Positions 1 through 56,033 are shown, counted from the first letter of the stretch. The stretch is DNA of 64,000 bases from Macrostomum lignano (GCA_002269645.1 NIVC01000404.1:124001-188000), one strand, 5' to 3'. Notes: a model not told the origin generated them from the letters alone. Translations and numbers: made by a program.

Positions 1-906
1 GAGACTCTATGCCACTAGGATATGGAGACTCTATGCCACTAGGATATGGAGACTATTATGCCACTAGAATATGGAGACTCTATGCCACTAGAATATGGAG
101 ACTCTATGCCACTAGAATATGGAGACTCTATGCCACTAGAATATGGAGACTCTATGCCACTAGAATATGGAGACTCTATGCCACTAGAATATGGAGACTC
201 TATGCCACTAGGATATGGAGACTCTATGCCACTAGGATATGGAGACTCTATGCCACTAGAATATGGAGACTCTATGCCACTAGAATATGGAGACTCTATG
301 CCACTAGAATATGGAGACTCTATGCCACTAGAATATGGAGACTCTATGCCACTAGGATATGGAGACTCTATGCCACTAGGATATGGAGACTATTATGCCA
401 CTAGAATATGGAGACTCTATGCCACTAGAATATGGAGACTCTATGCCACTAGAATATGGAGACTCTATGCCACTAGAATATGGAGACTATTATGCCACTA
501 GAATATGGAGACTCTATGCCACTAGAATATGGAGACTCTATGCCACTAGAATATGGAGACTCTATGCCACTAGAATATGGAGACTCTATGCCACTAGAAT
601 ATGGAGACTCTATGCCACTAGAATATGGAGACTATTATGCCACTAGAATTTGGAGACTATGCCACTAGAATATGGAGACTCTATGCCACTAGAATATGGA
701 GACTCTATGCCACTAGAATATGGAGACTCTATGCCACTAGAATATGGAGACTCTATGCCACTAGAATATGGAGACTATATGCCACTAGAATATGGAGACT
801 CTATGCCACTAGAATATGGAGACTATTATGCCACTAGAATATGGAGACTATGCCACTAGAATATGGAGACTATTATGCCACTAGAATATGGAGACTCTAT
901 GCCACA
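1..906. repeat. 24-bp tandem minisatellite (GAGACTCTATGCCACTAGAATATG), runs off the window start
   Basis: Directly visible periodicity with occasional 23/25-bp variants. The overlapping MPLEYGDS/YATRIWRL ORFs are artefacts of the repeat. Confidence 0.97.
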
Positions 907-2042
907 TGCCATTAGAACGAATCCTAGAGTTAATATCTATGCAAATTATAGGAAAACGGAAGTAATAAAACCATAAAAGCGCTAAAATTCAAACACGATA
1001 CTCGAGCAGACACGGGACCAAGAGATTTAGTCAACCTGGTAAATCCAGGCTATTTATTTTTGCATTCCGTAATGCTTGTAATTGTAAAGATAATATAGAA
1101 ATATAATAATAAAAAGAACTCAATAAAAATAAACAAGCGCATTTTTGACTACTTAAAATAGGAATTACCGGATAATCGACACTATTATTTGTGGGAAGAA
1201 ATGTGAGAATAATAATTCAATATTTATTAAAAAACAATATTTTTGCAATTTAAAATATGATACTCGACATGGGGCAAAAGTTATATTCAGGCACTGAAAG
1301 CATTTTTATTATTTAATACAAAACGCTGACAAACGTTTGCAGGAATGAAAGTTTTGGCTTTTGCACAAGTTAGATTACAACTATTAATTAAGAAAATGTA
1401 TTATTTCAAATGACTGGTTTATTGCTAGTACTGGTACTGCTACTAATAGGAAATGCCGAACAATCTAAAAAAATAATTTAAACTGTTCATTACTTAATAA
1501 AGAACAAAGTGGAAGCTAAAAAGTATATTTGTTTTACTATATTGATTTTATAAAACGAAAAAAATAAAAATACTTTTAAACTTGGATTTTTTAAAACTGC
1601 AAATGGTATTAGATACAGTTATTAAAATCTTGCCTAGTTACCAACAGAAAAATCAACTACAACTTCATCAGCCTTGAAACATAAAAGTCAAGAAATCGAA
1701 GATTACTAGTGACGTTTTTTTAAATAGGAAAAAAATAGAACTTCACTTAGAACTTCGTATATGATAATTTAGCAAGAAGTGGAGCTTACTTATTTAGTGG
1801 GCCTAATTAGTGACCATTAAGTGGACTGTATACAAGCTTATAAAATCAGTCTAGTCAGTCTATACAATGGATTGAATGCTTCAAGGCTAAACGTTGTTTG
1901 TCACGGCGAGACAGTCTATGGTAAAAACCTTGTTGGCGTTCCATAAACCCTTAATGTTACGGTCTTAACGTCCTTTTGACTTAATAAATAGCAAACTGTA
2001 TATTTGTGCGTAGCCAAGCTACTCATAGTAGCAATCGCAAAT

Positions 2043-2390
2043 TCAACAACCAGACGAAGTAGATCCGCAATCGTTAGACTCCTGATGAGACGAGGTCGAG
2101 TCTTCAGACGATTCGCTCAACAACAGACGCTGACAAAGCCAGCGTACGGAGCGATTTAACAGCAACTGCTGATGCAGAGAACCGTGCACCCGGCGCATAG
2201 TGATTCGAAATCTACCAGGCAGAGACACGCCAGCAATTTGGGCTTTGTGCACCGATAGGGCGGCTAGGGAACAGGCGTCGTGACAGCCGTTGGGGCAGTT
2301 TGGCCATAGACTATTGCTCACTAGGCTGGTGGCTGGGTCACCACTCTTACTAGAAGCAGACGCACCATTTTTAACGGATGAAGAGTCCAT
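2043..2390 (-). CDS. Small single-exon protein (115 aa), IER/SERTA-like helical domain preceded by a CxxGCHDxC motif; paralogue A
   Basis: Gapless 55-aa alignment (22 identities) to the ORF at 4251-4874. The segment LSVHK...GSLHQQLLLNRSVR resembles the IER/SERTA S-x-x-K...L-H-x-x-L-L-x-N pattern. Family assignment is by eye. Confidence 0.65.
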   Translation of the reverse strand: MDSSSVKNGASASSKSGDPATSLVSNSLWPNCPNGCHDACSLAALSVHKAQIAGVSLPGRFRITMRRVHGSLHQQLLLNRSVRWLCQRLLLSESSEDSTSSHQESNDCGSTSSGC

Positions 2391-2553
2391 GTTGAACTTT
2401 TAATTAATGTGATCAGAAATTTATTTTTTGGAAAATATTTTGTGTATATGTATTTAATAATAGTTTATTCACATAAAACACAAATATCTAATAATCTAAT
2501 ACTGTAAATTACAAACAACATAAATGTTCTGGCCTTCTTTACCATTCGAAAGG

Positions 2554-3305
2554 CTGACTCCATTGACCCCTCTCAGAACTGACTCCATTAACCCCTCTCA
2601 GAACTGACTCCATTGACTCCTCTCAGAACTGACTCCATTGACCCCTCTCAGAACTGACTCCATTGACCCCTCTCAGAACTGACTCCATTGACCCCTCTTA
2701 GAACTAACCCCATTGACCCCTCTCAGAACTGACTCCATTGACCCCTCTCAGAACTGACTCCATTGACCCCTCTTAGAACTGACTCCATTGACCCCTCTCA
2801 GAACTGACTCCATTGACCCCTCTCAGAAATGACTCCATTGACCCCTCTCAGAACTGACTCCATTGACCCCTCTCAGAACTGACCCCATTGACCCCTCTCA
2901 GAACTGACTCCATTGACCCCTCTTAGAACTGACTCCATTGACCCCTCGGCCCTCTTAGAACTGACTCCATTGACCCCTCTCAGAACTGACTCCATTGACC
3001 CCTCGGCCCTCTTAGAACTGACTCCATTGACCCCTCTTAGAACTGAATCCATTGACCCCTCGGCCCTCTTAGAACTGACTCCATTGACCCCTCGGCCCTC
3101 TTAGAACTGACTCCATTGACCCCTCGGCTTTCTTAGAACTGACTCCATTCACACCTTTGTAAAACTGGCCCTTTGAACTCCTTCTTAGAACTGACCACCT
3201 AATACCTCTTAGAACTGAACCATTGACCCCCCTTAAAACTGACCCCTTGACCTCCCTCTTAAAACTGACTCCTTGACCTCCCTCTTAAAACTGACTCCTT
3301 GACCT
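2554..3305. repeat. 25-bp tandem minisatellite (CAGAACTGACTCCATTGACCCCTCT), with longer variants at the 3' end
   Basis: Visible periodicity; lies between the two paralogous small genes. Confidence 0.95.
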
Positions 3306-3579
3306 CCGTTTTATGCTACTAGGACTAAATATTGATCTGTAATGTAAAAAATAAAAAAAAATTAAAACTCAACAGCAAATGTTAAAATTCATACAGACAA
3401 AATCTTTTTACAGCGCATTTTTTATTTATGAATATTGATTACAATCCAATACAAAAAATTTGACAGTTAAACTACTACAAGTTAATGCTGTAGTTAGCAG
3501 AAAACTTTAAAATACAATAAGAATTATATTGAAAGCATGATTTGCATAACCAAACACAAGCTGACACATTGGGTTAACC

Positions 3580-4103
3580 CAGGGGTCGGCAAAAGGGGGG
3601 CCGTAGCCCAGCGGTAGCGCAGCTGCTCTGGTGTGCCAGCGACCCAGGCTCGATTCCAAGTGCAGTCACATTAATTTGGGGCTGAATTGGAATCTCGGCT
3701 TGGCTCTGCTCGTGCAATTAACGGCCTTGAGAGCCAACCGCCCAAGGCGCAGTGAAGTGTACATGCCTAACGATAAAATAAAGTTAGGGCCGCTGTACAC
3801 TCCTGTGTGAGTGTGTGCCTGCGTACGTATCCGCGCGCTTGTGTGCCTGCTCAGGGGAGTCGGCGGAATGGGCAGTAATGCCTCTCGCCGGTTGTGTGCC
3901 TATTTCGCTTAAAGTGCGCCAGGGTGCACACAACCCCCCTGCCTCTAATAAAAAAGGCAAACTTTTTTACCTCGAGGACCAGGGGAGAGGGGAGAGGAGA
4001 TGAAATTGAGAAGAGAGCTGAGAAGAGACAAACCTTGAACGGATTGCTATTATGAAGTTTCAAAGGACCCCCGAGTGTCGGATAGAGAGTTTGCCGACCC
4101 CTG
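3580..4103. mobile_element. Non-autonomous hAT-type MITE (~524 bp)
   Basis: Perfect 14-bp TIR CAGGGGTCGGCAAA (3580-3593) / TTTGCCGACCCCTG (4090-4103). Flanking 8-mers GGTTAACC / GGTTAAAT match at 6/8. CAG termini and 8-bp TSDs are typical of hAT. Confidence 0.8.
3596..3822 (+). mobile_element. tRNA-derived SINE, nested inside the hAT MITE
   Basis: Pol III A-box TAGCCCAGCGG and B-box-like GGCTCGATTCC. The body is homologous to the minus-strand copy at 51767-51985 and the fragment at 18866-18901. Ends in GTGTGTGCCTGC. Confidence 0.8.
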
Positions 4104-4250
4104 GGTTAAATGATCAATTAAAAGCCAAATATCGTATGATGCATAAAATCAAGATTTACAAGTCAATGGTTATACTCAAAGACAAAAGAAATGTGCAGAC
4201 ACCCAACTATTAACACATCGTCATTAAAATAGGGCAATTGTTTACATTAG

Positions 4251-4874
4251 TCAGATTTCCCTCCCGCCAACCAGCTCCCTCAGTTGACGCTGGCGCAGAC
4301 GCTGACGCAATCGTTGAAGCCGCCTACGTCGAGTTCTTCCCAATTTGTTGTTGCCACCGGCTCTCTTCTTCATGTTCTTCTTCTCCTCCAAAGACGATGG
4401 CGAAGATGCTGGGGTCAGTCGGACCGGCTGGTAATTCTCAGTCACCAATACTAGGGAGTTTAAGCGTCGATGCTGAAATTTGCTGTTACCATGGTTACTG
4501 TTATCAGTATGATTATTTTTGTCATTAGACAGGCAAATCTTCTTAGTTTCAATTGAGCATTCGCTTTCATAAGTGTCACTGCGAGACTGGGCCTCCTCAA
4601 CAGGACGCTTCCTACTGACATCTTCATCGGCTAATCCAGCCTCCTTAGTCATGATGTCGCACAGCCGCCGGAGGCAATTATTAACCAGCATGCGGTCCAG
4701 AAACGGCCTGGCCTCGCGTCGCATTTGCGGACGAAATCGGCCACGGATTGGTTTGTCAAATTTCTGCAATTTAGTCATGGAGGTTAATAGCAGGTCGCAC
4801 ACATCGTGACAGCCTAAGTCGCAGGTTTTGTAGGCAAACTTGCCAGCCTTCATCGAGTCTGAAGAGAGACACAT
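4251..4874 (-). CDS. Small protein (207 aa), IER/SERTA-like domain with CxxGCHDxC motif and basic C-terminal tail; paralogue B
   Basis: LLTSMTKLQK...FLDRMLVNNCLRRL resembles the SERTA/IER pattern. Aligns without gaps to 2043-2390. The ATG is directly preceded by a TTTCAG acceptor. Confidence 0.7.
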   Translation of the reverse strand: MCLSSDSMKAGKFAYKTCDLGCHDVCDLLLTSMTKLQKFDKPIRGRFRPQMRREARPFLDRMLVNNCLRRLCDIMTKEAGLADEDVSRKRPVEEAQSRSDTYESECSIETKKICLSNDKNNHTDNSNHGNSKFQHRRLNSLVLVTENYQPVRLTPASSPSSLEEKKNMKKRAGGNNKLGRTRRRRLQRLRQRLRQRQLRELVGGREI

Positions 4875-5381
4875 CTGAAATATGGAATTAAAAAAACGAG
4901 GGTGTGTGTGTTAGAAGCGAAACAGTTTTCGAAATAAAAGTCATAATTATTGGTTTTGTCACGTGGCCCGAATTTTTCGACGAAACGAATTTCGAATTAA
5001 CGATCCAACAGCATTGCAACCAGTTAGCTGTCTGCAAAAATATGAGCAGCTGTTTCGGGGTGGCGCGGGTAAAATTGAGAAAAAAATTGTAAATAAACAA
5101 TCTAAAATATCCTAACTAAACTATAACTATCCTAGTTGTCAATCATTGAATAATTATTGCAGAATAATTTTGTTTTCAATATATTAAAAACATTTTCAAA
5201 CCTGTCGCTTCGTTTAATAAATAACTCGATGAGCAACAGACACAGGTGAGGTAGAGGCGATTTCTCTACAAAATAGAAACAAAAAATAATAACAATTTCG
5301 TGGTAGTAGATTAACAAAAAAGCATTCTAAGAAATGAAGCCTAAACGATATTTTTTCAAGATGAATAGGACTAAAGTTGCC

Positions 5382-6177
5382 TCAGCACCAAGAGGCGCCA
5401 GCACCAAGAGGCGCCAGCACAAAGAGGCGCCAGCACCAAGGGGCGCCAGCACCAAGGGGCGCCAGCACCAAGAGGCGCCAGCACCAAGGGGCGCCAGCAC
5501 CAAGGGGCGCCAGCATCAAAGGGGCGCCAGCACCAAGAGGCGCCAGCACCAAGAGGCGCCAGCACCAAGTGGCGCCAGCACCAAGGGGCGCCAGCACCAA
5601 GGGGCGCCAGCACCAAGGGGCGCCAGCACCAAGTGGCGCCAGCATCAAAGGGGCGCCAGCACCAAGAGGCGCCAGCACCAAGTGGCGCCAGCACCAAGGG
5701 GCGCCAGCACCAAGAGGCGCCAGCACCAAGGGGCGCCAGCACCAAGGGGCGCCAGCATCAAAGGGGCGCCAGCACCAAGAGGCGCCAGCACCAAGAGGCG
5801 CCAGCACCAAGTGGCGCCAGCACCAAGAGGCGCCAGCACCAAGAGGCGCCAGCACCAAGGGGCGCCAGCACCAAGAGGCGCCAGCACCAAGGGGCGCCAG
5901 CACCAAGAGGCGCCAGCACCAAGGGGCGCCAGCACCAAGAGGCGCCAGCACCAAGGGGCGCCAGCACCAAGGGGCGCCAGCATCAAAGGGGCGCCAGCAC
6001 CAAGAGGCGCCAGCACCAAGAGGCGCCAGCACCAAGTGGCGCCAGCACCAAGAGGCGCCAGCACCAAGGGGCGCCAGCACCAAGAGGCGCCAGCACCAAG
6101 TGGCGCCAGCACCAAGTGGCGCCAGCACCAAGAGGCGCCAGCACCAAGGGGCGCCAGCATCAAAGGGGCGCCAGCAC
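5382..6177. repeat. 16-bp GC-rich tandem minisatellite (GCGCCAGCACCAAGAG)
   Basis: Visible periodicity; all six frames are open as a consequence. Confidence 0.97.
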
Positions 6178-7471
6178 TAACGTCCAGGCTTCATTTAAAA
6201 GAATGTTTTGTTTTTTTGTTCTACTAAACATTTCGTGGAAAATAACCTGACAGTTGATCAACCGTCTCCTCAGAGATGACGCAGCTTAGGCCCGGCTCCA
6301 ATCGACCGGTTTTGCAGATTGCAACTTTTGACGAGACAAAAGTAACGACAAAGGAAAGGGTGGGTAGGATGATGTCAAATATGATGTCAAACAACTATAG
6401 ACAACAGCCTAACTATTTCTAAATAAAAAAACGTTTGGGAAAAATGAAAACACACTGTAAGAGACGCGAGTCGTCTCCATTGAAAAAAAGGCAGCACACC
6501 GCTGCTCTTAGATAGCATATTTATTAGGTTGAGTAGGCAGGCATAAGCCACCATGTGTAATTCAAATTAAGAACAAAATTGCCTCTCTTCAAAGGCTACA
6601 AAAGACTGATTTACAGGAAAACCCACCTGATTGGAGCTTTTGTCTCGTCTAAGCCCAGCTGATAACCTACAATTATATAATTTCTGAGCAGACCATTTCC
6701 AACACACAGAGCACCTGAGATAGAATAACTGATGAGGAATGTGAATGTTTACGAATACTAAAAATTTCATACGTATTATATTAATTACAAATACAAACAT
6801 TCACCCAGATTCATCCAAATTTGCAAGCACCTCGTTCCGCCGCAACCGCCGACTGCAATGCAATGAAATGCAAATCAAATAGAGAAAGTTTTTTTATTTT
6901 TTACTACATACATACTACTATAAATAGTGAAAAGGCCAGACATTAGAGTTTGTCGTTTCACGACCGAGGAAGCACTCTGCTTCGCAGGCCAAATAAATTA
7001 GACAACAGTTGAGTCATCAGTTGGCAGTCGCATTTCAAGTTTGTTGCATAAATTATTAATAAAATAAAGAAACCTAAAAATAGAATGAGAATTAATAAAC
7101 TAATAAATACTATGTATAGATTATTAAAACAATTTGGGAGTTATAAAAACTTAAAATCTTTGCAAAACTTAAGACGTCATAATTATCGAAAATTTTAAGT
7201 TTATTTTAATTTTATAATAGTCTTAACCATAATCTATGCATCTATCTAACACAGTCTAAAAGAGAAAAATAAATACTAAATAGTAGTCAATATTAGTTTA
7301 GATTATTTTGCAAGTGTATTTTTGTTCAGTAGGAAATGTTGAATCGAATCACAAAAAACTTGGACGGAGAACAACGAAGTTTCAAAACAGAAATAGTTAA
7401 AAATTTATGCTCAAAAGACGCTACTAACGCTGTTAGTAGTATAAAAACAAGTAGTCAACAGTTGCAGAAAA

Positions 7472-7867
7472 TCATTTCTGCATTTGAAAATGATCAATAA
7501 AATCGTTCTGCTCCTTAGCCGTAGCCTCCAACGAGCGAAGCTGTTTCTGCAGCCGATCTAAGCTAGCCTGCTTCTCCAATATCTGAGCCTGCAACTGCTG
7601 CACCTGCTCCTGACGCTGGGTGCTCACGCATTTCAATTGGTTCAGCGCACCAATGCGTATCATTTTCTCTTTTTCAACTTCAGTAGCAGCAACATCCACA
7701 GCCTGTAGCAGGTTGGACACTAAGCGTTGAAAGTCTTCAACAGTGATGGTAAACTGGCCACATTTGTCTTTGAGATCAGTAGACTCAGTTGACACTTCTG
7801 GTTCGATAATGTGCAGTGTGTTTAATTCATCAATATTTAAACCAAGCTTTGCTAGAATATCGTCCAT
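7472..7867 (-). CDS. IFT20: Intraflagellar transport protein 20 (131 aa, intronless CDS)
   Basis: MDDILAKLGLNIDELNTLHIIEPEV...EVEKEKMIRIGALNQLK...QLQAQILEK...EQNDFIDHFQMQK is collinear with human IFT20 (GLHFDELNKLRVLDPEV...EAENEKMKAIGARNLLK...EQNEFIDQFIFQK). The second ATG (7867) gives the canonical length. Confidence 0.96.
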   Translation of the reverse strand: MDDILAKLGLNIDELNTLHIIEPEVSTESTDLKDKCGQFTITVEDFQRLVSNLLQAVDVAATEVEKEKMIRIGALNQLKCVSTQRQEQVQQLQAQILEKQASLDRLQKQLRSLEATAKEQNDFIDHFQMQK

Positions 7868-10800
7868 GACTTTTCTTTCGATGCTGTCTTTTATTTCTCT
7901 CTCATGCATTGTTTTAATCAGTATAAATTAGGTTCTATTATATAATACATTAATACAATATATAGCCTTACAATCCAACTGGGGCTATTTCTACAGATTT
8001 TAGATCATATTTCTATGCATATATGTGTGTATATCAAGTATCTTAAAGTTGTTAAACATTAAATGGCTTACTTTATCAAATTCCCATGCACATAGACTAT
8101 CAAAATATGCAAATTAATTTCTATATAAGAGAAATCAAATGTTTGAAAATATAAGTTATATTGATATACATTAATAAATAGTTGTTTTATGACTGTTTTA
8201 TAAAATTTGTTTAAAAAGTGCTTTATATATCATGTAAGTCTTTCTTACTTTAAAAATTTTGTTGTTTCTAGATGCTTTAGTTTTTTATAAATATTAAGTT
8301 CTTTATTTATTTATTTCTTTTTCAAACCTTTTCTTATTAGGTTTTGATATTTGCCTTTTGACCCATTTTATTTTACAAAACTTTTAGTTTGACTATGCTA
8401 ATAATATTATCCTATAATAGAAACAGGTTTTGGCTAAGCTGGTAATATTGCAAGACTTACTTTTATATAGATAATAGAGAAAAAAGCAAAAACATACTTA
8501 GGACAAATATTAGTTAAGTATAAATAATTATATAGAAAACATGCAAAAAAACTTTTTGGGCAAAATGAACATAAAACATAATGAATGAATAAAATGCATT
8601 ACAAGACATGAAATTATAAAAAAGAACAGAAATTTTATAACTTTAATTATTGACAATTTATGTAACAACCAAATATCAAGATACAGAGATATCTAAATAA
8701 TATATAGTACAATATAATATATGTGTTAGATCATATTGAAGGCTGAAGCCAAGGTCTAAATTATGCTAGATTCTCTTTTTCATATGCCAGACTGCATCTA
8801 CATTGCCAGGGGCTAATCTGCATTAGAACTGTCTACAATAATAGCCATTAGGCACATAGCCAGGATCTACATCAATGGGGGGACAGAGGCATCAATATCT
8901 CTGATGTTAGAGATAGAAGCAAAATATAAAAGCAGTAAAAAATTTCAGCTCTAAGGGGGACATATCCATAGTGACCCCATAGCTATGTCCTTAATGGCCA
9001 TTGGTTGCAATAAGGGTGCTAGACAGATGGCTAATATGGCTAATAAGAATATAGACTTATTCTTATTTATTAATTTACTTACTTACTTATTTACTTACTT
9101 ATTGATTATTAATTGTTTTTTAATAAGTTCAAATTGTTCAAAACACAAAAAGTAAGCTAATAAGTTAATATTAAATAGTTTTTCATTAAAAAATAATGCT
9201 AAAAGTAAGATTTTTATTTGAAAATTGTTGAAATAAAATTTGTTAGAAATTTGTCTAAATATAACTTAAACAATTGGCTTAAACTTTGTCATTCTATGAC
9301 CTCAAATCTAGGTTTATTCACCGATCTCAGGTTATTTTTGTTTTAAGGTTTTTTAAGTTTTTTTCTAGGTTGCAGACACCTTACACTAATATAGTAAGAT
9401 ATTAAAATCAATTAAGACATAAGTAAAATGCCTGTAATCAATTAGTATTATTAATTTAAGTAAACAAACAACAAAATAACTATTTGTTTAACATTAATTA
9501 AATGAATAAAGAAATGGCCATTTATATAGTTACTAGGCCTAATAATTCAATTAATAACACCATATCTAGAATCTAAATGATATATATGTATGCCAGAATT
9601 TTCTGGTATATAGAGGGATCTATTAGTAAAAACACCATTGGTATACAAATTGGCATATAGAAGAGCATATCTCTTGGTACATAGCTTAGTGTATAGAGAT
9701 TGCCAAGACAACAAATAGGACTAAAGTTCTAAGTCCCAATTAATGTATATAGTTAATGTAAAAAATTCTTAAGTTCAGTTTGGCAATCTCCGCCAGACTC
9801 TGGAAGGTTACATGTACACAAGAATTTCCGGCATACAAATGACCCCTTTCAAAGTCGGTGTATAAATTTTGGTGTACAAACAAAGTCTTACCACTTTTGG
9901 CATATAAACAAAGTCTTGCCATTTTTGGCATACAAACAAAGTCTTGCCATTTTTGGTGTATAAATTTTGGCCTACAAACTTATGCTATGTGACTTGTGCA
10001 TGAAAATTTTAACATAAATTACATAATTTATATTAAAAAATTCCAAGAACTATTTCAAAATGAGTTTAACTTTTTTAAAATGCTTTTTTGACCCGAATGA
10101 CCTTTTTAGAAATTTTGGCATACATAGTAGGAGAATTGTTACCCCTTTTTGGTGTAGGACTAAGATTGTCACACACCGAGACTGCCACACTTGGGGGAGC
10201 TAAGGGAGAAATTTGACTCAATGTGCTATTAGATGGTGCTAGAGAGAAGATGAGTAAGTAGGAGAGCCAGCAGGACAAGGCTGCAAGAAAAGAACCTATG
10301 AGAGGAATAACAATGCTAGAAGATTAGTAGCTTGTAGTAGTCTTTGTGTGTGGCAGTCTTAGTCATGTATCCCCTTGTTGATGTACACTGGCATACATTT
10401 AGATGAGCTAGGATTCTTGTTCTGGCATATACTACTATACAATCCAGACCCTAAAGTCTCTTTATATACCACAGTCAGGAAGGTGGCCTTTTTCATCGAA
10501 AATTCCAGCTAAATTTTGATAAAAAAGAATAGTTTTTAATCCTTTCTACTTAATAATAGAAAACTAAATAAAAAAATTGTTTCATTTTTCTAGAAAGTTA
10601 AAAGTTAAAGTTAAACAAAAATAGTTTAAAAAATAGTTCCTGATGCTTTAGTAAAAAATTAAACTGTTTTTTTCTAATCATTTTTTAAATTTTGAAACTT
10701 TGTAAACCTTTAATATTATATAGGTCATAGTTTATAAATTATTTTTTGTATACTCTTATTTTTGTATGCAATAAAAGTCTATTCAGATAATTCAGAGTGG

Positions 10801-12934: not shown

Positions 12935-14967
12935 ATGCCCAGACGCAAATCCAAGCAAGCCAAGAGAAACTATGCTGCAGCTGCTGCTGCTTCCTCAATT
13001 ACTCCGAGTCCCTTTGGAATGCCATCTTATCCTAATACCCGCTGGAATCACCGACATAGAAGTTCCAGCAGTAGCAGCAACTCAATGGAAGTGGACTCTC
13101 AGCAGATGGGATCAATTCCACAGACTCAGCCAGTCAGTGTTGATCAGGTTGAGAACAGTGCAGGTGGCTATGTATTCCAAGTGACTGACATCCAGCAGCT
13201 CAAGCGCTTCATCTGCATTGGATGCGAGTCTGGCACCTACTATGCTAGTGAGAATGAACTCACAGTTACTAACATTCTAGCGCTGCAGAACCTCATCCAA
13301 GCCGGCCAAGGACCAGAAGCTGTAGCCACTATTCGACAGTATAGTGTCGAAGGTCGAACTGCTAAACAGGATGGCATACAAATTGCTTTGGCTCTGTGTG
13401 CCCATAGCAACGATCCGGCCACTAAACGAGCGGCCTACGCTTGCCTAGACGAGGTGTGCCGCATACCAACTCACCTGTTCCAGTTTGTCGACATCGGGCA
13501 GAAGGCCTGCCAGCCTGCTGGCACAGGCTGGGGTCGGGCTCAACGCCGGGCAGTCGCTAAATGGTACCTGCAGTTTGCCGACACGCCAAAACGTCTGGCC
13601 TACATGGTGACAAAATATCGCAACAGAGGCGGCTGGACTCATCGCGATCTGCTGCGACTTTGCCACGCTAAAACTGACAAACCATTGCTTAACTGCCTAT
13701 TGCGCTACTGCGTTAAAGGTATCGAAGCTGTTCGCGATAACTGGCCTAGCGAGTCTGACTCGGCCAACGTGCTGGCCTATCTAGAGGCCATCGAACAGCT
13801 GCATAAGATGGACAACGGCGAGGAGTTTGTAGCTGCCGGGCTCATTGAAAAATTTGGCCTAGTTCGCGAGCACGTGCCCGCACCTCTGCTAGGGTCAAAG
13901 CAGGTGAGATTTTACCCCCTTATCCGCTTAACTCAAAAACTCTCCAGGCCTCTCGCCAATGTACACTCGCTCCCGACCAACCTCTTAACTCCCTAACCAT
14001 CCAAAACAAGCCTCTCCGCCAATGTACACTCGCTCCCGACCAACCCAAACCCTCCAAAACAAGTCTCTCCCAATGTACACTCGCTCCCCTTAAAATTTTA
14101 CGACCTATTTTATCGCTGACGCACTGCTATCTTATTAATAAATCTTCAACTTTACCTTTCAGGTCATGGCGGCCCTGCTCACTAACATGCCGCTGACAGC
14201 TATGCTCCGTTCCCTAGCCAAATACCTCAGCTCGGGCCTATTCACCGACAAGCCCGACCTTCTAGACACTGTTATCGAACGTATAACCAACGCCGACCTG
14301 CTGCACAAAGCAATGATTCATCCGATCAACGTTCTAGCCGCCTGGCGCATTGTTGACTCCGGTCGGGGCTTTCGCGGCGGTTTGACTTGGCAACCCGAGC
14401 CTCGACTAGTGACCGCGCTTGAGAAAGCGTTCTACCTGTCATTTAAAAATGTGAAGCCAACCGGTAAAAGAATCCTACTGGCTCTGGACGTTAGCGGCAG
14501 TATGAGTTCGCCAGCTAATCCTATTCAGTGCATCAGTTGCGCAGAAGCTGCTGCAGCTCTGGCTATGGTCACAGTTCGAATCGAACCTGCCAACACCTGC
14601 CAAGTGGTTGGTTTCTGCTCCAAACTAGTCAATTTAAACATCTGCTCTGGCTAAAACTAGCAAACGTAATTTTGGTTCAACAGACTGCGCCCAGCCGATG
14701 CTGTGGGCGCTGAAGCAACGTCGCCAATTCGATCTTTTTGCTGTCCTGACTGACAATGAGACCTACTTTGGCCGCGTGCATCCACACGAAGCTCTGGTAA
14801 AGTATAGGAATCGGATGAATCTGCCAGAAAGCCGCCTAGCCGTGATGGCAATGACGGCTAGCAAATTCAGCATTGCCGATCCCAAAGATCCCGGCATGCT
14901 CGATCTGGTCGGCTTTGACGCTTCCGTGCCGGAGATTCTGCGCGAATTCGCTCTGGGAGAATTTTGA
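12935..14967 (+). CDS. RO60: Ro60/TROVE2 RNA-binding protein. Exon 1 12935-13903, exon 2 14163-14967, with a frameshift at ~14640 (possible pseudogene or assembly error)
   Basis: TROVE motifs QVENSAGGYVF, LKRFICIGCESGTYY, TKYRNRGGWTHRDLLRLCH, REHVP. Phase-0 GT-AG intron (SKQ|VMA). vWA MIDAS motif ALDVSGSM. The C-terminus TDCAQPMLWA...VLTDNET...IADPKDPGMLDLVGFD lies in a different frame. Confidence 0.95.
13940..14090. repeat. Three degenerate repeat units inside the RO60 intron
   Basis: Core CCAATGTACACTCGCTCCC occurs three times and is related to the 48-bp satellite downstream. Confidence 0.8.
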
Positions 14968-16110: not shown

Positions 16111-16924
16111 GATTTGGTTCGGGTTTCAATTTTTTATTTACTTTGTTAATCACTTCAAAGAATATCCAGGCGAAAAGCTCTACTAGAGCTGCCTTAGTTA
16201 TATATTATATTTTCTTTATATTTTAAAGTTTGGTTATAAAAATCAAACATTGTGTGCCATGCGTTTTGCTATTATTTTTTCTGCTTCTAGCCTAACAGAA
16301 ACAAAAAACGATATATGTTTGTACATAAAGTTCTCTAGTGTGCTGTCTAACTCTATTAAAATTTTAATAAACGTTCTATTCAATCAAATAAATATCCTTG
16401 TTTATGCAACGTTTTTTCATCAATTTATATAAATCAGAAAATTCAAACTGCTGTTTATTAAAAGATTGAATTCATTTTATGAAGTTGTTTTCGATACATA
16501 TCGGCCAAATTAAACTAAATTATAAATCTGCAGTTAAATGGTATTTACTGAACTCTCGCTGCATGAGGAATACTTCACTTTCTACTGTGATAATCCTGAT
16601 AAGGTAAATATAAACTAATTTAATTCAATTCATATCCGACACCTTTGCTAGTTGCTTAATTCTCATTTTAAAGTTGTATTAATAAAACTATCATCATTTT
16701 GTCTTGTAGTGCGATAAAACCCAGTTTTTCCATCAAACTGTAATTTAACAGTTCCTCAAGTTCAGTTGTTGGGAAAACTAAATTTATTGACAAACTTTGT
16801 TATTTACTGGCAGACAGGCGGCCAAAAATAATCTTTGAGAAGTTAGTTTTGAAAAAAGGCTTTGGGTTATTGTGCACACTCTGGGGATGCAATGAAATCC
16901 CACCTATTAAAAAATCCCATCAAG

Positions 16925-17560
16925 CTAGTGAAATCCCACACAGTAAAATCCCACCTATTGAAATCCCACACCGTGAAATCCCACCTGTTGAAATCCCACA
17001 CAGTAAAATCCCACCTATTGAAATCCCACACCGTGAAATCCCACCTGTTGAAATCTCACTCAGTGAAATCTCACCTAATGAAATCCCTCACAGTGAAATC
17101 CCACTCGTTGGAATCCCACCTGTTGAAATCCCACCTAATGAAATCCCACACAGTAAAATCCCACCTATTAAAATCCCACACCGTGAAATCCCACCTGTTG
17201 AAATCTCACTCAGTGAAATCTCACCTAATGAAATCCCTCACAGTGAAATCCCACTCGTTGGAATCCCACCTGTTGAAATCCCACCTAATGAAATCCCACA
17301 CAGTAAAATCCCACCTATTGAAATCCCACACAGTGAAATCCCACCTAATGAAATCTCACACAGTAAAATCTCACCTAATGAAATCCCACACAGTAAAATC
17401 CCACCTATTGAAATCCCACACAGTGAAATCCCACCTAATGAAATCTCACACAGTAAAATCTCACCTAATGAAATCTCACACAGTAAAATCTCACCTATTG
17501 AAATCCCACACAGTAAAATCCCACCTATTGAAATCCCACACAGTAAAATCCCACCTAGAG
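16925..17560. repeat. 15-bp tandem minisatellite (GAAATCCCACCTATT / AAAATCCCACACAGT) with higher-order structure
   Basis: Visible periodicity; a 150-bp block recurs at 17041 and 17191. Confidence 0.95.
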
Positions 17561-17656
17561 AAATCCCAGTTAGGGAACTCGAACTCAACGGAATTCAGTA
17601 TTCAACACTGTCCTATCCTATTTTTTCATCTACATGTACGTCTACTTGTATACCAA

Positions 17657-18188
17657 ATGGCCAATCAGTCCCAGCAGCAGCTCGTCTGCCTTGACGATTT
17701 CGAGCGCTGGGCCCTGGCAACCCTGCCACGCAAGACTCTCGATTATTACCGCAGCGGCGCCAACTGCGAACGAACTTTACGCGACAATGTTAACGCATTT
17801 CAAGACTGGCTACTGATGCCGCGAATGCTGGTTGGCGTTGCTAACAGGAGCGTGGCAACTACGTTGCTAGGGCAACCGGTTTTTGCGCCGATTGGAGTTG
17901 CGCCGACTGCGATGCAGAGGCTGGCTAGTGATAGAGGCGAGCTGGATACGGCAGAGGCTGCCGCGGAGGCTGGGGTGTGCCTCACTGTCAGCACCATCGC
18001 CACTTGCAGCCTGGAGAGTGTAAGATGCGTGTGACATGTCTGTCTGTCTGTCTGTCTGCCTGTCTGTCTGCCTGTCTGTCTGTCTGCCTGTCTGTCTGTC
18101 TGTCTGTCTGTCTGACTGTCTGTCTGTCTGTCTGTCTGTCTGCCTGTCTGTCTGTCTGTCTGTCTGACTGTCTGTCTGTCTGTCTGCC

Positions 18189-22170: not shown

Positions 22171-23868
22171 TCAAATGCAGTCAGGCGATGCCAGGTACAC
22201 TAATCTGTCTAGTTTGTTCATAAATCTGCAGCAGCACTGCTGCCTTGGTCTATTACCGACTCCATCTTCGCTGTTTCTACCGCATAAAACTGCTCGATCT
22301 CCGCCGACGCCCTTCGCCGACGACGTTCCATTCCGACGTCGACGAATCCATTCGGCAATGCCGGCTACGGTGGAAGCGACATCTTTGCCTAAATTTGAGC
22401 CGCTATGAGTTTTAGTGAGCTGCTCAACCAACAGGTCGGTCATCTCTGGAGCGCCTAACGACCATAGCAACAGATGGTTGCTAGGTATGCTTAGGCGCGG
22501 CGTTTCTACAGATGCTGCTGCACTGTATGCTGTAGTCGTTACTGGCGTGAGCTCTCCGACAACAAACACTGGAGGTAGGCGGCCTCGCTGACCAACAGCC
22601 AGAGTTGCTAGAATGTCCGTCAGGGTCACGCTGCCGCCACTGGCCGCTTCGAAGTGTTCTCGACCGCCGCGGCCCAGGCAGAACACGAAGCAGCAGTCGC
22701 GTCCACTTTCAGACATCGCCGAGGCCGTCTGCCGCAGCAGCCGTAGCGTCTCTCTGCGCGACTTGTTCCAGTGGATAAACACGGTGAACTCCAGCCGGCT
22801 GTTGAACAGGCGGCCGATTGCCGCTGCCGCGTCACGAATCTGATTGGCTCGGGCCAGCAGCTGGCGCGGACTGCCGCCGTCCGCTGCGGCAGCATCCATA
22901 TCGGCTTCTTCATCAGAGGCAGGGTCAGCTTCAGCAGTTGGTTGTGTACCGCTTGTTGTTGTACCATTGGCAGGCGTTGGACAGTTTGAGTTGCTGTTCA
23001 GAGCGGCGGTCGATGCGGGCAAAAGGCTGGCATAGTTGGCAAACACAACGCATAGGCCGTTACACGCCTGCAGCTCAAGGGGCGGCTCCTGCGGCTGCTG
23101 CGGCTCTGAATGTGCTGTCAGTCTCTGCGTGCTGGCTGACCTATTGCTGGATGGTTGAATTCGGATCAAGAATGTTGCTTCAGTTGATACAGAGAGACAG
23201 AGAGTAGTTACAGGCTTTTTCCCACCTAAATTTTAGTTGTAGACCAATTCTTTCTGAACCACCCTCATTGACAATGTGCGAATCAGGCTATACTACTCGT
23301 AGTTAGGCAACCTATAGCGCAAAGCCAGAGCGTCCCATAGCCAGTTATGAGGCACTTCTGCCCATTTCGCTGACTCTTGAGCATATAATCCTGGACACAC
23401 AAGCCCCGCTTGTGAGAGTGAGATCTTGTCACAATTATTGTCTGCATACTTCGCACAAGTACAGCATTGAATATCTTACCTTGTTGATGAGCTGGCGTCA
23501 TTAAAACTGCGAGCACTGTTCGTGATTTCGATATTGTTGACTTCATCCGTCTGCAGTCGGTTTCCGTTTGAGTTTGTCTTCGACGATTTCGCCGCAGATG
23601 CTCCTACTGGTGCTGCTGTTGTCGGCGAGTTCAACAGGTCCTGCAGTTCCGCTATCAACTGTCTAGCTTTGGACACCACAGTCGAAGGATTGTCAGCATC
23701 TTCTGGCTGCAGGGGCGCGTATAATGATTGCCTTTGTCGTGGCGAGGTCCTGCAGTTACTATTTGTAGTATGAGTGTAGCTGCTTGCTGAGTCCTGTATA
23801 GCTCCAGTCGCAGTTCTTGCCGATGTTGAGGCTAAGCTAGTGACCTCGGAGCTGTTACAACTTGTCAT
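22171..23868 (-). CDS. Caspase-fold protein lacking catalytic His and Cys (pseudo-caspase) with a Ser/Thr-rich N-terminal region. Probable exons 23868-23480 and ~23146-22171
   Basis: Caspase elements in order: GLCVVFANY (beta1), DAAAAIGRLFNSRLEFTVFIHWNKSRRETLRLL, DCCFVFCLGRG (SHG site, H to R), LPPVFVVGEL (KPKLFIIQAC site, C to L), IPSNHLLLWS, terminal MNKLDRLVYL. Donor AG|GTAAG at 23480; the exact acceptor is uncertain. Confidence 0.7.
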
Positions 23869-55577: not shown

Positions 55578-55966
55578 AGTCAGTGCCATATTTAGGTGTC
55601 AATCAGTGCGATATTCAGGTGCCATATTCAGGGGTCAATCAGTGCCATATTCAGGTGTCAATTAGTGCCATATTCAGGTGTCAATCAGTGCCATATTCAG
55701 GTGTCAATCAGTGCCATATTCAGTTGTCAATCAGTGCCATATTCAGGTGTCAATCAGTGCCATATTCAGGTGTCAATCAGTGCCATATTCAGTTGTCAAT
55801 CAGTGCCATATTCAGGTGTCAATCAGTGCCATATTTAGGTGTCAATCAGTGCCATATTCAGGTGTCAATCAGTGCCATATTCAGGTGTCAATCAGTGCCA
55901 TATTCAGGTGTCAATCAGTGCCATATTCAGGTGTCAATCAGTGCCATATTCAGGTATCAATCAGTC
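55578..55966. repeat. 23-bp minisatellite immediately upstream of GLO1
   Basis: Unit TCAGTGCCATATTCAGGTGTCAA. Confidence 0.96.
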
Positions 55967-56033
55967 ACATTCAGCACTCCAATCCCAACCCCAATCCCCC
56001 ACCTGGCAACCAGCTGTCACCTGTCAATCAATC

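What the first reader, a model, noticed from the sequence alone, without database searches (positions are those of the whole stretch)
2043..4874. Tandem pair of small paralogues sharing an unannotated-looking Cys/His plus IER/SERTA-like domain
Seen: the two minus-strand ORFs align without gaps over 55 aa with 22 identities: CPNGCHDACSLAALSVHKAQ.......GRFRITMRR.....LHQQLLLNRSVRWLC versus CDLGCHDVCDLLLTSMTKLQ.......GRFRPQMRR.....LDRMLVNNCLRRLC. The rest of each protein is unrelated low-complexity sequence, which implies selection on this domain. Established: IER and SERTA proteins share an S-x-x-K helix followed by an L-x-x-x-L-L/V-x-N helix, and IER genes are intronless immediate-early genes that regulate PP2A. 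Inference: this is a lineage-specific variant with an added CxxxCHxxC putative metal site and a GRFRxxMRR insert. An AP-1 site (TGAGTCA, ~7009) and a CRE-like TGACGCA (~6276) upstream would fit stimulus- or wound-induced expression.
Basis: partly seen in the sequence, partly recalled or inferred. Interest (0 to 1): 0.75.

Follow-up and report, generated by a model that had tools for sequence, protein, structure and literature searches.

The report
Flatworm gene pair with IER/SERTA-like hairpin
Two small neighbouring genes of the flatworm Macrostomum lignano share a strongly conserved 58-residue Cys/His-plus-two-helix block found nowhere else so far; it weakly but specifically resembles the hairpin by which IER and SERTA proteins grip the PP2A-B55 phosphatase, so the pair may be a lineage-specific version of those regulators.

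Summary
ORF1 (2043-2390, minus strand, 115 aa) and ORF2 (4251-4874, minus strand, 207 aa) align without gaps over 58 aa with 22 identities (E=5e-12). The window is Macrostomum lignano contig NIVC01000404.1.

Two other copies of the locus carry both genes as transcript-based "hypothetical protein" models, placed in one transcriptional unit with IFT20 and a prefoldin subunit.

Against the diverged duplicate locus, the shared block has 1 nonsynonymous and 7 synonymous changes (omega 0.04). The tails have 16 and 5 (omega 0.93; Fisher p=0.003). These are real genes, and selection acts on the block.

No relatives turned up among 1.84 billion representative proteins. Neither ORF passes the Pfam SERTA or IER threshold. 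However:
- SERTA is the only Pfam family that ORF2's block touches (E=0.068; 0.0014 with 11 loop residues removed).
- hhalign against a small SERTA alignment gives P=0.005 (0 of 300 shuffles reach it).
- ORF1 exactly fits the published two-helix IER/SERTAD consensus for B55 binding, the only such match in the window (0.005 expected).

My best reading, at about 45%, is a divergent PP2A-B55-binding hairpin with a loop about 10 residues longer and more basic, and an added Cys3His/Cys4 clamp.

The immediate-early promoter idea is not supported: the AP-1 and CRE 7-mers occur at chance frequency.

The parts
4251..4874 (-). ORF2: single-exon CDS of 207 aa (N-terminal conserved block, acidic middle, Arg-rich C-terminal tail)
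   Evidence: 100% identical in L003, which is the same contig. The orthologous model PAA88178.1 (206 aa, Mlig010213g3) at the duplicate locus keeps the same frame and length. The L001 copy has a 1-bp deletion at window 4414 that changes the tail.
4659..4832 (-). ORF2 conserved block, residues 15-72
   Evidence: BLASTP and tblastn. Against L002 it has 4 synonymous changes and 1 conservative nonsynonymous change, M62I.
4797..4823 (-). ORF2 Cys/His cluster C18-x3-C22-H23-x2-C26 (putative metal ligands together with C72)
   Evidence: Invariant between the paralogues. The metal site itself is an inference.
4767..4793 (-). ORF2 helix-1 motif L28-L36, LLLTSMTKL (S32 and K35 correspond to IER5 S14 and K17)
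   Evidence: Comparison with the consensus [I/L][aliphatic or aromatic]x[aliphatic]S[aliphatic]xK[aliphatic] in bioRxiv 10.1101/2023.08.29.555174: one mismatch (T31). AF2 predicts a helix over ORF2 residues 23-38 at low confidence.
4716..4742 (-). ORF2 basic loop motif G45-R53 (GRFRPQMRR), the 'insert' relative to SERTA and IER
   Evidence: GRFRxxMRR is invariant between the paralogues. hhalign places an 11-residue gap here against SERTA.
4659..4703 (-). ORF2 helix 2, F58-C72 (FLDRMLVNNCLRRLC)
   Evidence: The Pfam SERTA HMM matches residues 50-62 of the 76-aa block to profile positions 20-33 of 36, E=0.068, and is the only family hit.
4278..4382 (-). ORF2 Arg/Lys-rich C-terminal tail K165-R199 (NLS-like; inferred)
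   Evidence: Read directly from the sequence. The tail evolves nearly neutrally and is frameshifted in L001.
4875..4880 (-). TTTCAG immediately 5' of ORF2's ATG: a candidate SL trans-splice acceptor
   Evidence: Fits the [T/C]TNCAG trans-splice acceptor motif of PMC8629364 and is conserved in all three locus copies. The gene models at the duplicate loci start 3 and 24 nt downstream.
2043..2390 (-). ORF1: single-exon CDS of 115 aa (Ser-rich N-terminus, conserved block, acidic/Ser-rich tail ending in Cys)
   Evidence: Identical protein P0002 is annotated in L001; PAA88179.1 (Mlig010213g4) is annotated at the duplicate locus.
2133..2306 (-). ORF1 conserved block, residues 29-86, containing LAALSVHKA (helix 1), GRFRITMRR (loop) and LHQQLLLNRSVRWLC (helix 2)
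   Evidence: Against L002 it has 3 synonymous and 0 nonsynonymous changes. It is the only place in the six-frame translation of the window that matches both published IER/SERTAD helix consensus motifs (1 found, 0.005 expected).
7472..7909 (-). IFT20 gene, upstream neighbour on the same strand. At the diverged duplicate locus (L002) it is g1 of the unit that also holds the ORF2-type (g3), ORF1-type (g4) and prefoldin (g5) genes; at L001 it is g1 of the unit holding the ORF2-type gene (g3).
   Evidence: Pfam IFT20 E=2e-33. Names Mlig010213g1 and Mlig027659g1.
5383..6177 (.). 16-bp minisatellite (49 copies) in the IFT20-ORF2 spacer
2554..3304 (.). 25-bp minisatellite in the ORF2-ORF1 spacer
3574..4109 (.). 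536-bp MITE-like element with perfect 20-nt terminal inverted repeats in the ORF2-ORF1 spacer

Best explanation
ORF1 and ORF2 are two real, expressed, single-exon genes of Macrostomum lignano. They are old tandem paralogues of a family so far seen only in this species.

The functional part of each protein is the 58-residue block. It most likely folds as helix 1, a basic loop and helix 2, forming a hairpin. The open end of the hairpin would be clamped by a metal site or disulfides formed by C18/C22/H23/C26, at the start of helix 1, and C72, at the end of helix 2.

The two helices carry the signature of the IER/SERTAD hairpin that docks on the B55 regulatory subunit of PP2A. That signature is the helix-1 S-x-x-K with its hydrophobic face, and the helix-2 L/F, L/M, L, L/V, N and R positions. 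The conserved GRFRxxMRR loop would take the role of IER5's basic loop on B55's acidic surface.

I therefore propose that the pair are divergent PP2A-B55 adaptors or inhibitors. ORF2 repeats the IER layout of an N-terminal hairpin with a C-terminal basic, NLS-like tail. ORF1 has a SERTAD-like acidic tail.

They are not stand-alone immediate-early genes. They sit inside a multi-gene transcriptional unit resolved by SL trans-splicing: IFT20, g2 (unidentified), ORF2, ORF1, prefoldin.

Shown: the paralogy, the purifying selection on the block, the synteny and annotation, the taxonomic restriction, and the sub-threshold SERTA/IER similarity. Inferred: the hairpin fold, the metal clamp, B55 binding, nuclear localisation, and use of the trans-splice acceptor.
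For: Paralogy: 22/58 identities, ungapped, E=5e-12.

Real genes under selection: both ORFs are intact at all three locus copies, except for one 1-bp indel in the tail of one copy. Against the diverged duplicate L002, the block has 1 nonsynonymous and 7 synonymous changes (omega 0.044), and the tails have 16 and 5 (omega 0.93); Fisher p=0.0033. Flanking intergenic DNA is 90-94% identical with many indels, whereas the CDSs are about 97% identical with none.

Transcription: the Mlig_3_7 gene models are built from RNA-seq, SL reads and polyA reads (PMC5730564). The models are PAA62906.1, P0002, PAA88178.1 and PAA88179.1. The names g1, g3, g4, g5 place IFT20, ORF2, ORF1 and prefoldin in one transcriptional unit. 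TTTCAG directly precedes ORF2's ATG, matching the acceptor motif [T/C]TNCAG (PMC8629364).

IER/SERTA likeness:
- Pfam SERTA is the only family hit by ORF2's block, at E=0.068; with 11 loop residues removed it is E=0.0014, 18.7 bits, covering profile positions 5-33 of 36.
- hhalign of the block against a SERTA alignment gives P=0.0048 and score 17.3. The column-shuffle null has mean 8.6, sd 1.85, max 16.0, with 0 of 300 reaching the observed score.
- As a yardstick, SERTA against IER gives P=6e-5.
- The published consensus is [I/L][aliphatic or aromatic]x[aliphatic]S[aliphatic]xK[aliphatic] followed by [HKR]xxL[LI]x[SN] (bioRxiv 10.1101/2023.08.29.555174). It matches once in 128,000 six-frame residues of the window, in ORF1, against 0.005 expected.
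- The three IER5 positions whose mutation abolishes B55 binding are S14, K17 and L30. They correspond to S, K and L/F in both ORFs. I10, L34 and L35 are also conserved in type.

The comparison sequences were validated. The recalled SERTA sequences score 57-69 bits on Pfam SERTA. The recalled IER5 N50 sequence is identical to PDB 8UO5 chain D.

AF2 gives two helices separated by a loop.
Against: - Neither ORF reaches the Pfam gathering score for SERTA (13.3 bits for ORF2's block against 25; ORF1 gives no hit) or for IER (no hit). The SERTA hit disappears when full-length ORF2 is scanned.
- hhalign against IER is not significant: P=0.11, with 19 of 300 shuffles reaching it.
- A small SERTA HMM ranks ORF2 first of 1041 ORF fragments in the window, but at only 6.9 bits, and ORF1 is not in the top eight.
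- The most strongly conserved parts of the block, C..GCHD.C and GRFR..MRR, have no counterpart in IER or SERTA.
- The loop is about 10 residues longer than in IER5.
- The basic residue at the i+2 position of helix 2 (IER5 K32, CDCA4 R58) is Q in ORF1 and D in ORF2. The position matching IER5 V39 is S or C.
- The AF2 model is of low confidence (pLDDT 52), and Foldseek against the PDB returned nothing.
- The similarity was first noticed by eye, so the motif statistics are partly post hoc. Column shuffling also destroys helical periodicity, which makes that null too lenient.
- No expression or interaction data were found.
Confidence: 0.45

Rival explanations
1. An orphan Macrostomum-specific domain unrelated to IER/SERTA. 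It would be a small Cys3His/Cys4 metal-binding module with an arginine-rich motif (GRFRxxMRR, plus ORF2's RRRRLQRLRQRLRQR tail) that binds nucleic acid or some other partner. On this view the SERTA/IER resemblance is a chance or convergent property of amphipathic helices.
For: No relatives among 1.84 billion representatives other than the two ORFs themselves and spurious repeat-protein hits. The best-conserved residues are the Cys/His cluster and the Arg motif, neither of which occurs in IER or SERTA. ORF1's only Pfam hit is the arginine-rich C-terminus of poly(A) polymerase, below threshold (E=0.005-0.012, 16-17 bits against a cutoff of 22). All SERTA and IER scores are below threshold.
Against: SERTA is the single Pfam family picked out for ORF2 from 24,736. 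The exact two-motif consensus match in ORF1 falls inside the selected block and is expected 0.005 times per window. hhalign against SERTA exceeds all 300 shuffles. Serine and lysine, the two residue types most critical for B55 binding in IER5, are invariant in both paralogues and in the duplicate locus.
Confidence: 0.4
2. One reading: stand-alone intronless immediate-early genes of IER type, driven by their own AP-1/CRE-containing promoter and induced by wounding or other stimuli.
For: The CDSs are single-exon. Some IER/SERTA-like sequence features are present. The two 7-mers do exist at 7010-7016 and 6277-6283.
Against: Both 7-mers occur at chance frequency in the window (7 against 9.6 expected; 9 against 5.5 expected). 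They lie 1.4-2.1 kb upstream of ORF2, beyond a 795-bp minisatellite, in the 3' flank of IFT20. The genes are annotated as g3 and g4 of a transcriptional unit that starts with IFT20 and ends with prefoldin. ORF2's ATG abuts a trans-splice-type acceptor.
Confidence: 0.1
3. The ORFs are not functional genes. They would be chance open frames, pseudogenes or transposon-derived fragments in repeat-rich intergenic DNA.
For: The spacers are full of minisatellites and contain a MITE-like element. The genes are not annotated on this contig. One copy has a frameshift in ORF2's tail. The tails evolve at omega of about 0.9.
Against: The block has omega 0.044 with 7 synonymous changes against 1 nonsynonymous. 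Both frames are intact and of identical length at a locus whose intergenic DNA has diverged 6-10% with many indels. Transcript-based gene models exist at two loci. Copies occur only at the three syntenic loci, and there are no transposon-family hits.
Confidence: 0.04

Closest known systems
IER family N-terminal domain (IER2/IER5/IER5L; Pfam PF05760; structure: IER5-N50 bound to PP2A/B55alpha, PDB 8UO5)
   Same: Both have a two-helix hairpin near the N-terminus of a small, otherwise low-complexity protein. Helix 1 carries S-x-x-K (IER5 S14 and K17) on a hydrophobic face. The loop between the helices is basic. ORF1's helix 2 (L-H-x-x-L-L-L-N-x-x-V-R) is in register with IER5 L30-H31-x-x-L34-L35-V36-S37-x-x-L40-R41. 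ORF2 also has a C-terminal basic, NLS-like tail, and IER5 function needs N50 plus its NLS. The CDS is single-exon.
   Different: There is no Pfam IER hit, and hhalign gives P=0.11. The loop is about 10 residues longer. An extra C-x3-C-H-x2-C cluster sits at the start of helix 1, with a conserved Cys at the end of helix 2. IER5 K32 and V39 are not conserved. The genes lie inside a polycistronic unit rather than behind an immediate-early promoter. The family is restricted to Macrostomum.
SERTA domain (SERTAD1-4, CDCA4, Drosophila Taranis; Pfam PF06031), shown to bind PP2A-B55 as a helix-loop-helix (PMC11446282)
   Same: ORF2's helix 2, MLVNNCLRRL, resembles SERTAD2 VLINNMLRRI. SERTA is the only Pfam family that ORF2's block hits. 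hhalign gives P=0.005 with the S-x-K-L helix aligned. Both families have acidic regions after the domain.
   Different: Scores are below the gathering threshold (13.3 to 18.7 bits against 25). The conserved E-P before helix 2 is missing. The loop carries an 11-residue basic insert. The Cys/His cluster is absent from SERTA. ORF1 gives no SERTA hit.
Bacterial Big_9 / cadherin-like adhesin repeats (Pfam PF17963, PF17803)
   Same: They share the spacing F-x-Y-x-x-C-D-x-G-x4-C-D with ORF2 residues 13-27. This produced the only non-self hits in the exhaustive search.
   Different: These are extracellular all-beta repeats in giant bacterial proteins. The score is the sum of 5-16 weak repeat matches covering only the first 26-40 profile positions. 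The ORFs do not hit Big_9 in Pfam. I judge this a chance match.

Membership tests
Pfam SERTA (PF06031) | Score at or above the curated gathering threshold (25 bits) on the SERTA HMM | tested here: not met
   Full-length ORFs give no hit at E<=10. ORF2's 76-aa block scores 13.3 bits, E=0.068; with 11 loop residues deleted it scores 18.7 bits, E=0.0014. ORF1 gives no hit.
Pfam SERTA (PF06031) | Contiguous motif S-[LV]-x-K-L ... E-P-x-L-x-[RK]-x-V-L-[IV]-x-N-[TM]-[LV]-R-x-[IV], about 36 residues without long insertions | tested here: not met
   S-x-x-K and [LM]-[LV]-x-N..[LV]-R are present. The E-P is absent, and an 11-residue insert is needed.
Pfam IER (PF05760) | Score at or above the gathering threshold (22.6 bits) on the IER HMM | tested here: not met
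   No hit at E<=10. hhalign against an alignment of three IER N-termini gives P=0.11.
IER/SERTAD hairpin superfamily (bioRxiv 10.1101/2023.08.29.555174) | Helix-1 consensus [I/L][aliphatic or aromatic]x[aliphatic]S[aliphatic]xK[aliphatic] | tested here: met
   ORF1 LAALSVHKA fits fully. ORF2 LLLTSMTKL has one mismatch, T31.
IER/SERTAD hairpin superfamily (bioRxiv 10.1101/2023.08.29.555174) | Helix-2 consensus [H/K/R]xxL[L/I]x[S/N] downstream of helix 1 | tested here: inconclusive
   ORF1 HQQLLLN fits fully. ORF2 LDRMLVN fits at [L/I] and [S/N] only, with L in place of H/K/R and M in place of L. The spacing from helix 1 is about 10 residues longer than in IER5.
IER/SERTAD hairpin superfamily (bioRxiv 10.1101/2023.08.29.555174) | Helical-hairpin fold | tested here: inconclusive
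   AF2 with a 2-sequence alignment predicts helices at block positions 14-29 and 40-74, but mean pLDDT is 52 and pTM 0.27. Foldseek against the PDB gives no matches.
IER/SERTAD hairpin superfamily (bioRxiv 10.1101/2023.08.29.555174) | Binding to the B55 subunit of PP2A, sensitive to mutation of the helix-1 Ser and Lys | not testable with these tools
   Complex prediction with B55 is not available here, and no interaction data were found.
Immediate-early genes (IER sense) | Own promoter and rapid stimulus-induced transcription | tested here: not met
   Induction itself could not be tested, because no expression data were found. The only promoter evidence offered, the AP-1 and CRE 7-mers, is at chance frequency. 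The annotation places the genes inside a multi-gene transcriptional unit.
M. lignano SL trans-spliced operon genes (PMC8629364) | Same-strand neighbours in one annotated transcriptional unit, with a [T/C]TNCAG acceptor at the 5' end of a downstream gene | tested here: met
   Mlig010213 g1 (IFT20), g3, g4 and g5 (prefoldin) lie on one strand. TTTCAG abuts ORF2's ATG in all copies. No such acceptor is evident directly upstream of ORF1. SL reads themselves were not available.

The most novel reading that the evidence does not exclude
Platyhelminths, or at least Macrostomum, carry a previously unrecognised branch of the IER/SERTAD family of PP2A-B55 regulators. In it the B55-binding helical hairpin has gained a Cys3His/Cys4 metal clamp and a long arginine-rich loop. 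It is encoded as an ancient tandem pair, expressed constitutively from an SL-trans-spliced operon together with IFT20 and a prefoldin subunit, rather than as immediate-early genes.
Probability: 0.35. Interest if true: 0.55.

Novelty: new variant of a known kind. Interest (0 to 1): 0.4.

Why it matters
If the block really docks on B55, three things follow:
- The IER/SERTAD hairpin family would extend into flatworms in a form that sequence profiles miss.
- It would be a natural example of that hairpin stabilised by a metal site and with an enlarged basic loop. That is useful for understanding how B55 recognises helices, and for designing binders.
- M. lignano, a regeneration and stem-cell model that can be made transgenic, would gain two small candidate regulators of PP2A-B55 that are easy to target.

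If it does not dock on B55, the pair is still a clean case of a taxonomically restricted gene family with one strongly constrained mini-domain and freely evolving tails. That case is of modest general interest.

Tried and rejected
- Word-indexed homologue search with both ORFs found only the M. lignano proteins themselves.
- The exhaustive HMM search of 1.84 billion representatives found only the two ORFs plus giant bacterial adhesins. Those hits are sums of weak matches of F-x-Y-x-x-C-D-x-G-x4-C-D to Big_9/cadherin-like repeats. I rejected them as chance.
- PDB sequence search with the block profile gave nothing significant; the best was a 22-residue match to engineered phospholamban, E=0.027.
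- AF2 on the block gave pLDDT 52. Foldseek of that model against the PDB gave zero matches. I did not use the second AF2 job, because no deeper alignment was available.
- An attempt to collect real SERTA proteins from the large protein collection returned one fragment, P0008. I therefore used recalled human SERTA and IER sequences as comparison sets, after validating them against Pfam and PDB 8UO5.
- A small SERTA or IER HMM run against all ORF fragments of the window gave ORF2 top rank for SERTA, but at an insignificant score, and nothing for IER.
- dN/dS between the two paralogues is uninformative because dS is about 1.7, which is saturated. I used the duplicate locus instead.
- Literature and supplement searches for Mlig027659, Mlig010213 and Mlig032216 returned no hits.
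- tRNA and Rfam scans of positions 1-10000 found nothing.
- I considered and dropped C-x3-C-H as a variant haem-c attachment motif. I saw nothing in the sequences resembling a cytochrome c, and nothing supports it.
- I considered and dropped a twin Cx3C (small Tim) fold. The second motif is Cx4C in ORF2 and is absent in ORF1.
- I could not explain why the NCBI 'partial' gene models of ORF2 start 3 nt (L002) and 24 nt (L001) after the first ATG. I did not build on this.


Full report
**Where the window comes from.** The window is genomic DNA of the flatworm Macrostomum lignano. A profile of the two ORFs finds only M. lignano proteins. Six unique (non-repeat) segments between positions 906 and 7910 are all 100% identical to contig NIVC01000404.1 of assembly GCA_002269645.1, held here as locus L003. 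On that contig nothing is annotated upstream of a prefoldin gene.

The assembly holds two more copies of the locus:
- NIVC01001890.1 (L001, the same contig as L004) is about 99.4% identical.
- NIVC01000200.1 (L002) is 90-96% identical, with many indels in non-coding DNA.

Both extra copies have the same gene order on one strand: IFT20, an ORF2-type gene, an ORF1-type gene, Prefoldin_2, and a RING/NHL gene. M. lignano is described as a neopolyploid with large duplicated genome fractions (PMC12896417 abstract; PMC5730564). I therefore treat L002 as a diverged duplicate and L001 as an allele or recent duplicate; this is an inference.

**The observation.**
- ORF1 is 2043-2390 on the minus strand (115 aa). 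ORF2 is 4251-4874 on the minus strand (207 aa).
- BLASTP gives one ungapped alignment of 58 residues with 22 identities, E=5e-12.
- In the whole window, each ORF finds only the other.
- The invariant residues fall into four clusters: C..GCHD.C.L, then S..K.Q, then GRFR..MRR, then L.N...R.LC.

**Are these genes?** Yes, on four lines of evidence.

First, both have transcript-derived gene models at the other loci:
- PAA62906.1 (Mlig027659g3) and P0002 in L001.
- PAA88178.1 (Mlig010213g3, 206 aa) and PAA88179.1 (Mlig010213g4, 119 aa) in L002.

The Mlig_3_7 annotation was built from RNA-seq, spliced-leader reads and polyA reads. It distinguishes transcriptional units from the genes (g1, g2 and so on) cut out of them (PMC5730564).

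Second, both frames are intact and of unchanged length in L002, although the surrounding DNA has diverged 6-10% with dozens of indels.

Third, the substitution pattern against L002 is decisive:

| Region | Codons | Nonsynonymous | Synonymous | dN | dS | omega |
|---|---|---|---|---|---|---|
| Shared blocks, both genes | 116 | 1 (M62I) | 7 | 0.004 | 0.087 | 0.044 |
| Rest of both genes | 206 | 16 | 5 | – | – | 0.93 |

Fisher's exact test on these counts gives p=0.0033.

Fourth, between the two paralogues dS is saturated at about 1.7, so the tandem duplication is old. It predates the duplication that produced L002, because both members are present at each locus.

In L001 a 1-bp deletion in a CCCC run (window 4414) replaces ORF2's last 53 residues with a different Arg-rich tail. 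Whether this is an allele or an assembly error is open.

**Expression context.** At L002 the products are named as follows:

| Gene | Model name |
|---|---|
| IFT20 | Mlig010213g1 |
| ORF2-type | Mlig010213g3 |
| ORF1-type | Mlig010213g4 |
| Prefoldin_2 | Mlig010213g5 |

That is one annotated transcriptional unit. The M. lignano spliced leader ends in ATG, and trans-splice acceptors show the motif [T/C]TNCAG (PMC8629364). ORF2's ATG is immediately preceded by TTTCAG in all three copies. Operon spacers in this species are often inflated by repeats. Here the spacers hold a 16-mer minisatellite, a 25-mer minisatellite and a MITE-like element.

They lie in the 3' flank of IFT20. Nothing supports a private, stimulus-responsive promoter. 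Induction itself could not be tested, because I found no expression tables that mention these genes.

**What is the block?**
- It has no detectable relatives. An exhaustive HMMER search of 1.84 billion representative proteins returned the two ORFs themselves plus giant bacterial adhesins.
- Those adhesin hits are sums of weak matches of an F-x-Y-x-x-C-D-x-G-x4-C-D string to Big_9/cadherin-like beta-sandwich repeats. I regard them as chance.
- Pfam gives no family above threshold, and PDB sequence search gives nothing.
- No transposon family is involved, and copies exist only at the three syntenic loci.

**Test of the IER/SERTA idea.** I could not retrieve a SERTA set from the large protein collection; the search returned one fragment. 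I therefore used recalled human sequences and checked them first:
- The four SERTA segments score 57-69 bits on Pfam SERTA. The IER2 and IER5 N-termini score 64 and 122 bits on Pfam IER.
- The IER5 N50 sequence is identical to chain D of PDB 8UO5.

Results:
- hhalign of the two-ORF block against SERTA gives score 17.3 and P=0.0048 over 41 columns. It aligns S-x-x-K-L/A-Q with the SERTA S-L-x-K-L, and L/M-L-V/L-N..L/V-R with V-L-I-x-N-T-L-R. It opens an 11-residue gap exactly over GRFRxxMRR.
- In 300 column shuffles of the block, none reached that score (mean 8.6, sd 1.85, max 16.0). The reversed block scores 9.2.
- Against IER the score is 11.9 (P=0.11), reached by 19 of 300 shuffles.
- As a yardstick, SERTA against IER gives P=6e-5.
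- In Pfam, ORF2's 76-residue block hits one family out of 24,736: SERTA, at E=0.068 (13.3 bits). With the 11 loop residues removed it is again the only hit, at E=0.0014 (18.7 bits, profile positions 5-33 of 36). The gathering score is 25 bits. ORF1 gives no SERTA hit.
- A small SERTA HMM ranks ORF2 first among 1041 ORF fragments of the window, but at an insignificant 6.9 bits.

**Comparison with the published mechanism.** The cryo-EM study of IER5-N50 on PP2A/B55alpha defines an IER/SERTAD superfamily of helical hairpins (bioRxiv 10.1101/2023.08.29.555174). Its helix-1 consensus is [I/L][aliphatic or aromatic]x[aliphatic]S[aliphatic]xK[aliphatic]. Its helix-2 consensus is [H/K/R]xxL[L/I]x[S/N]. 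The study reports that S14A, K17E and L30E abolish B55 binding. I10A, R25E, K29E, H31A, K32E, L35A and V39A reduce it. SERTA domains bind B55 in the same way (PMC11446282).

ORF1 fits both consensus motifs exactly (LAALSVHKA ... HQQLLLN). This is the only such match in the 128,000 residues of the six-frame translation of the window, against 0.005 expected from residue shuffles. I anchored helix 1 on S/K. I anchored helix 2 on the L-L/N/R pattern. The correspondence with IER5 is then:

| IER5 residue | ORF1 | ORF2 |
|---|---|---|
| I10 | L | L |
| I13 | L | T |
| S14 | S | S |
| K17 | K | K |
| L30 | L | F |
| H31 | H | L |
| K32 | Q | D |
| L34 | L | M |
| L35 | L | L |
| V36 | L | V |
| S37 | N | N |
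| V39 | S | C |
| L40 | V | L |
| R41 | R | R |

The three positions essential for binding are kept in both proteins, while K32 and V39 are not. The loop between K and the first hydrophobic residue of helix 2 is 22 residues, against 12 in IER5. It is rich in invariant arginines; IER5's shorter basic loop contacts B55's acidic surface.

In an IER5-like antiparallel hairpin, where S14 contacts the backbone at V39, the residue matching C26 (IER5 H8) lies next to the residue matching C72 (IER5 R44). C22 and C18 sit one and two helical turns further out. The conserved Cys/His residues could therefore clamp the open end of the hairpin through a metal ion or disulfides. This is a geometric inference, not a result.

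AF2 with only two sequences predicts two helices separated by a loop, but at pLDDT 52. Foldseek found nothing with that model.

**Verdict on identity.** Membership of Pfam SERTA or IER was tested and not met. A relationship to the broader IER/SERTAD hairpin superfamily is suggested by three partly independent signals:
- the single Pfam hit of ORF2;
- the hhalign score, which is above all shuffles;
- the exact consensus match of ORF1 inside the block under selection.

None of these is significant at a level that would survive a sceptical correction for post hoc choice. I put about 45% on a B55-binding hairpin of IER/SERTA type. I put about 40% on an unrelated orphan metal-binding and Arg-rich domain, for example one that binds nucleic acid. 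A few percent remain for the ORFs not being functional genes.

**Architecture parallels (inference).** ORF2 combines an N-terminal hairpin with a C-terminal Lys/Arg-rich tail (K165-R199). IER5 needs N50 plus its nuclear localisation sequence for function. ORF1 and ORF2 both continue after the block with acidic, Ser-rich segments, and SERTAD proteins carry acidic activation regions. These tails evolve almost neutrally here, so any function they have depends on composition rather than on exact sequence.

**Novelty and interest.** The gene pair is already in GenBank as hypothetical proteins at two loci, but the domain is undescribed. If the B55 reading holds, it is a new variant of a known kind: an IER/SERTAD hairpin with a metal clamp, a long basic loop and operon expression. 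Otherwise it is a small lineage-restricted family. Interest is moderate, at 0.4.

Noticed in passing
window 3574-4109: A 536-bp element bounded by perfect 20-nt terminal inverted repeats (TTAACCCAGGGGTCGGCAAA / TTTGCCGACCCCTGGGTTAA) sits between ORF2 and ORF1. TTAA lies at both outer ends followed by CCC...GGG, which looks like a piggyBac-type MITE. The surrounding segment aligns over its full length in all three locus copies, so the insertion is older than the duplications.
   Followed up: partly
window 1-905, 2554-3304, 5383-6177: Three minisatellite arrays are present: 24-mer x38, 25-mer x29 and 16-mer x49. The 16-mer array is open in several frames on both strands and produces spurious ORFs of up to 297 aa.
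   Followed up: partly
window 4414 (L001 10437): The near-identical copy NIVC01001890.1 lacks one C of a CCCC run. This frameshifts ORF2's last 53 codons into a different, also Arg-rich, 13-residue tail (annotated product PAA62906.1). It could be an allele or a long-read homopolymer error.
   Followed up: partly
window 7472-7909 (-) and L001 6400-6828: The IFT20 gene model at L001 is 'partial' and starts at codon 4, directly after genomic ...CATGAG. The spliced leader ends in ATG. Trans-splicing at that AG would therefore supply an in-frame start codon (M-REIKD...), which would explain the 'partial' flag.
   Followed up: partly
L002 between 7847 and 10001 (window about 4875-7471): The transcriptional unit Mlig010213 has genes g1, g3, g4 and g5 with proteins, but no g2 protein was seen. 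An unidentified, possibly non-coding or repeat-derived, gene model may lie somewhere in this unit, possibly between IFT20 and ORF2.
   Followed up: no
window 12935-13996 (+), 16862-18034 (+), 22171-23169 (-), 55839-56921 (+): Other exon-sized ORFs in the window have Pfam hits: TROVE domain (E=1e-22), FMN-dependent dehydrogenase (E=2e-30), caspase domain (E=3e-5) and glyoxalase/dioxygenase (E=1e-9).
   Followed up: no
window 2043-2048 (ORF1 C-terminus): ORF1 ends in a Cys in both the window (…STSSGC) and the diverged duplicate (…STSSRC), although neighbouring residues changed. This is too little evidence to call it a lipidation or metal site.
   Followed up: no
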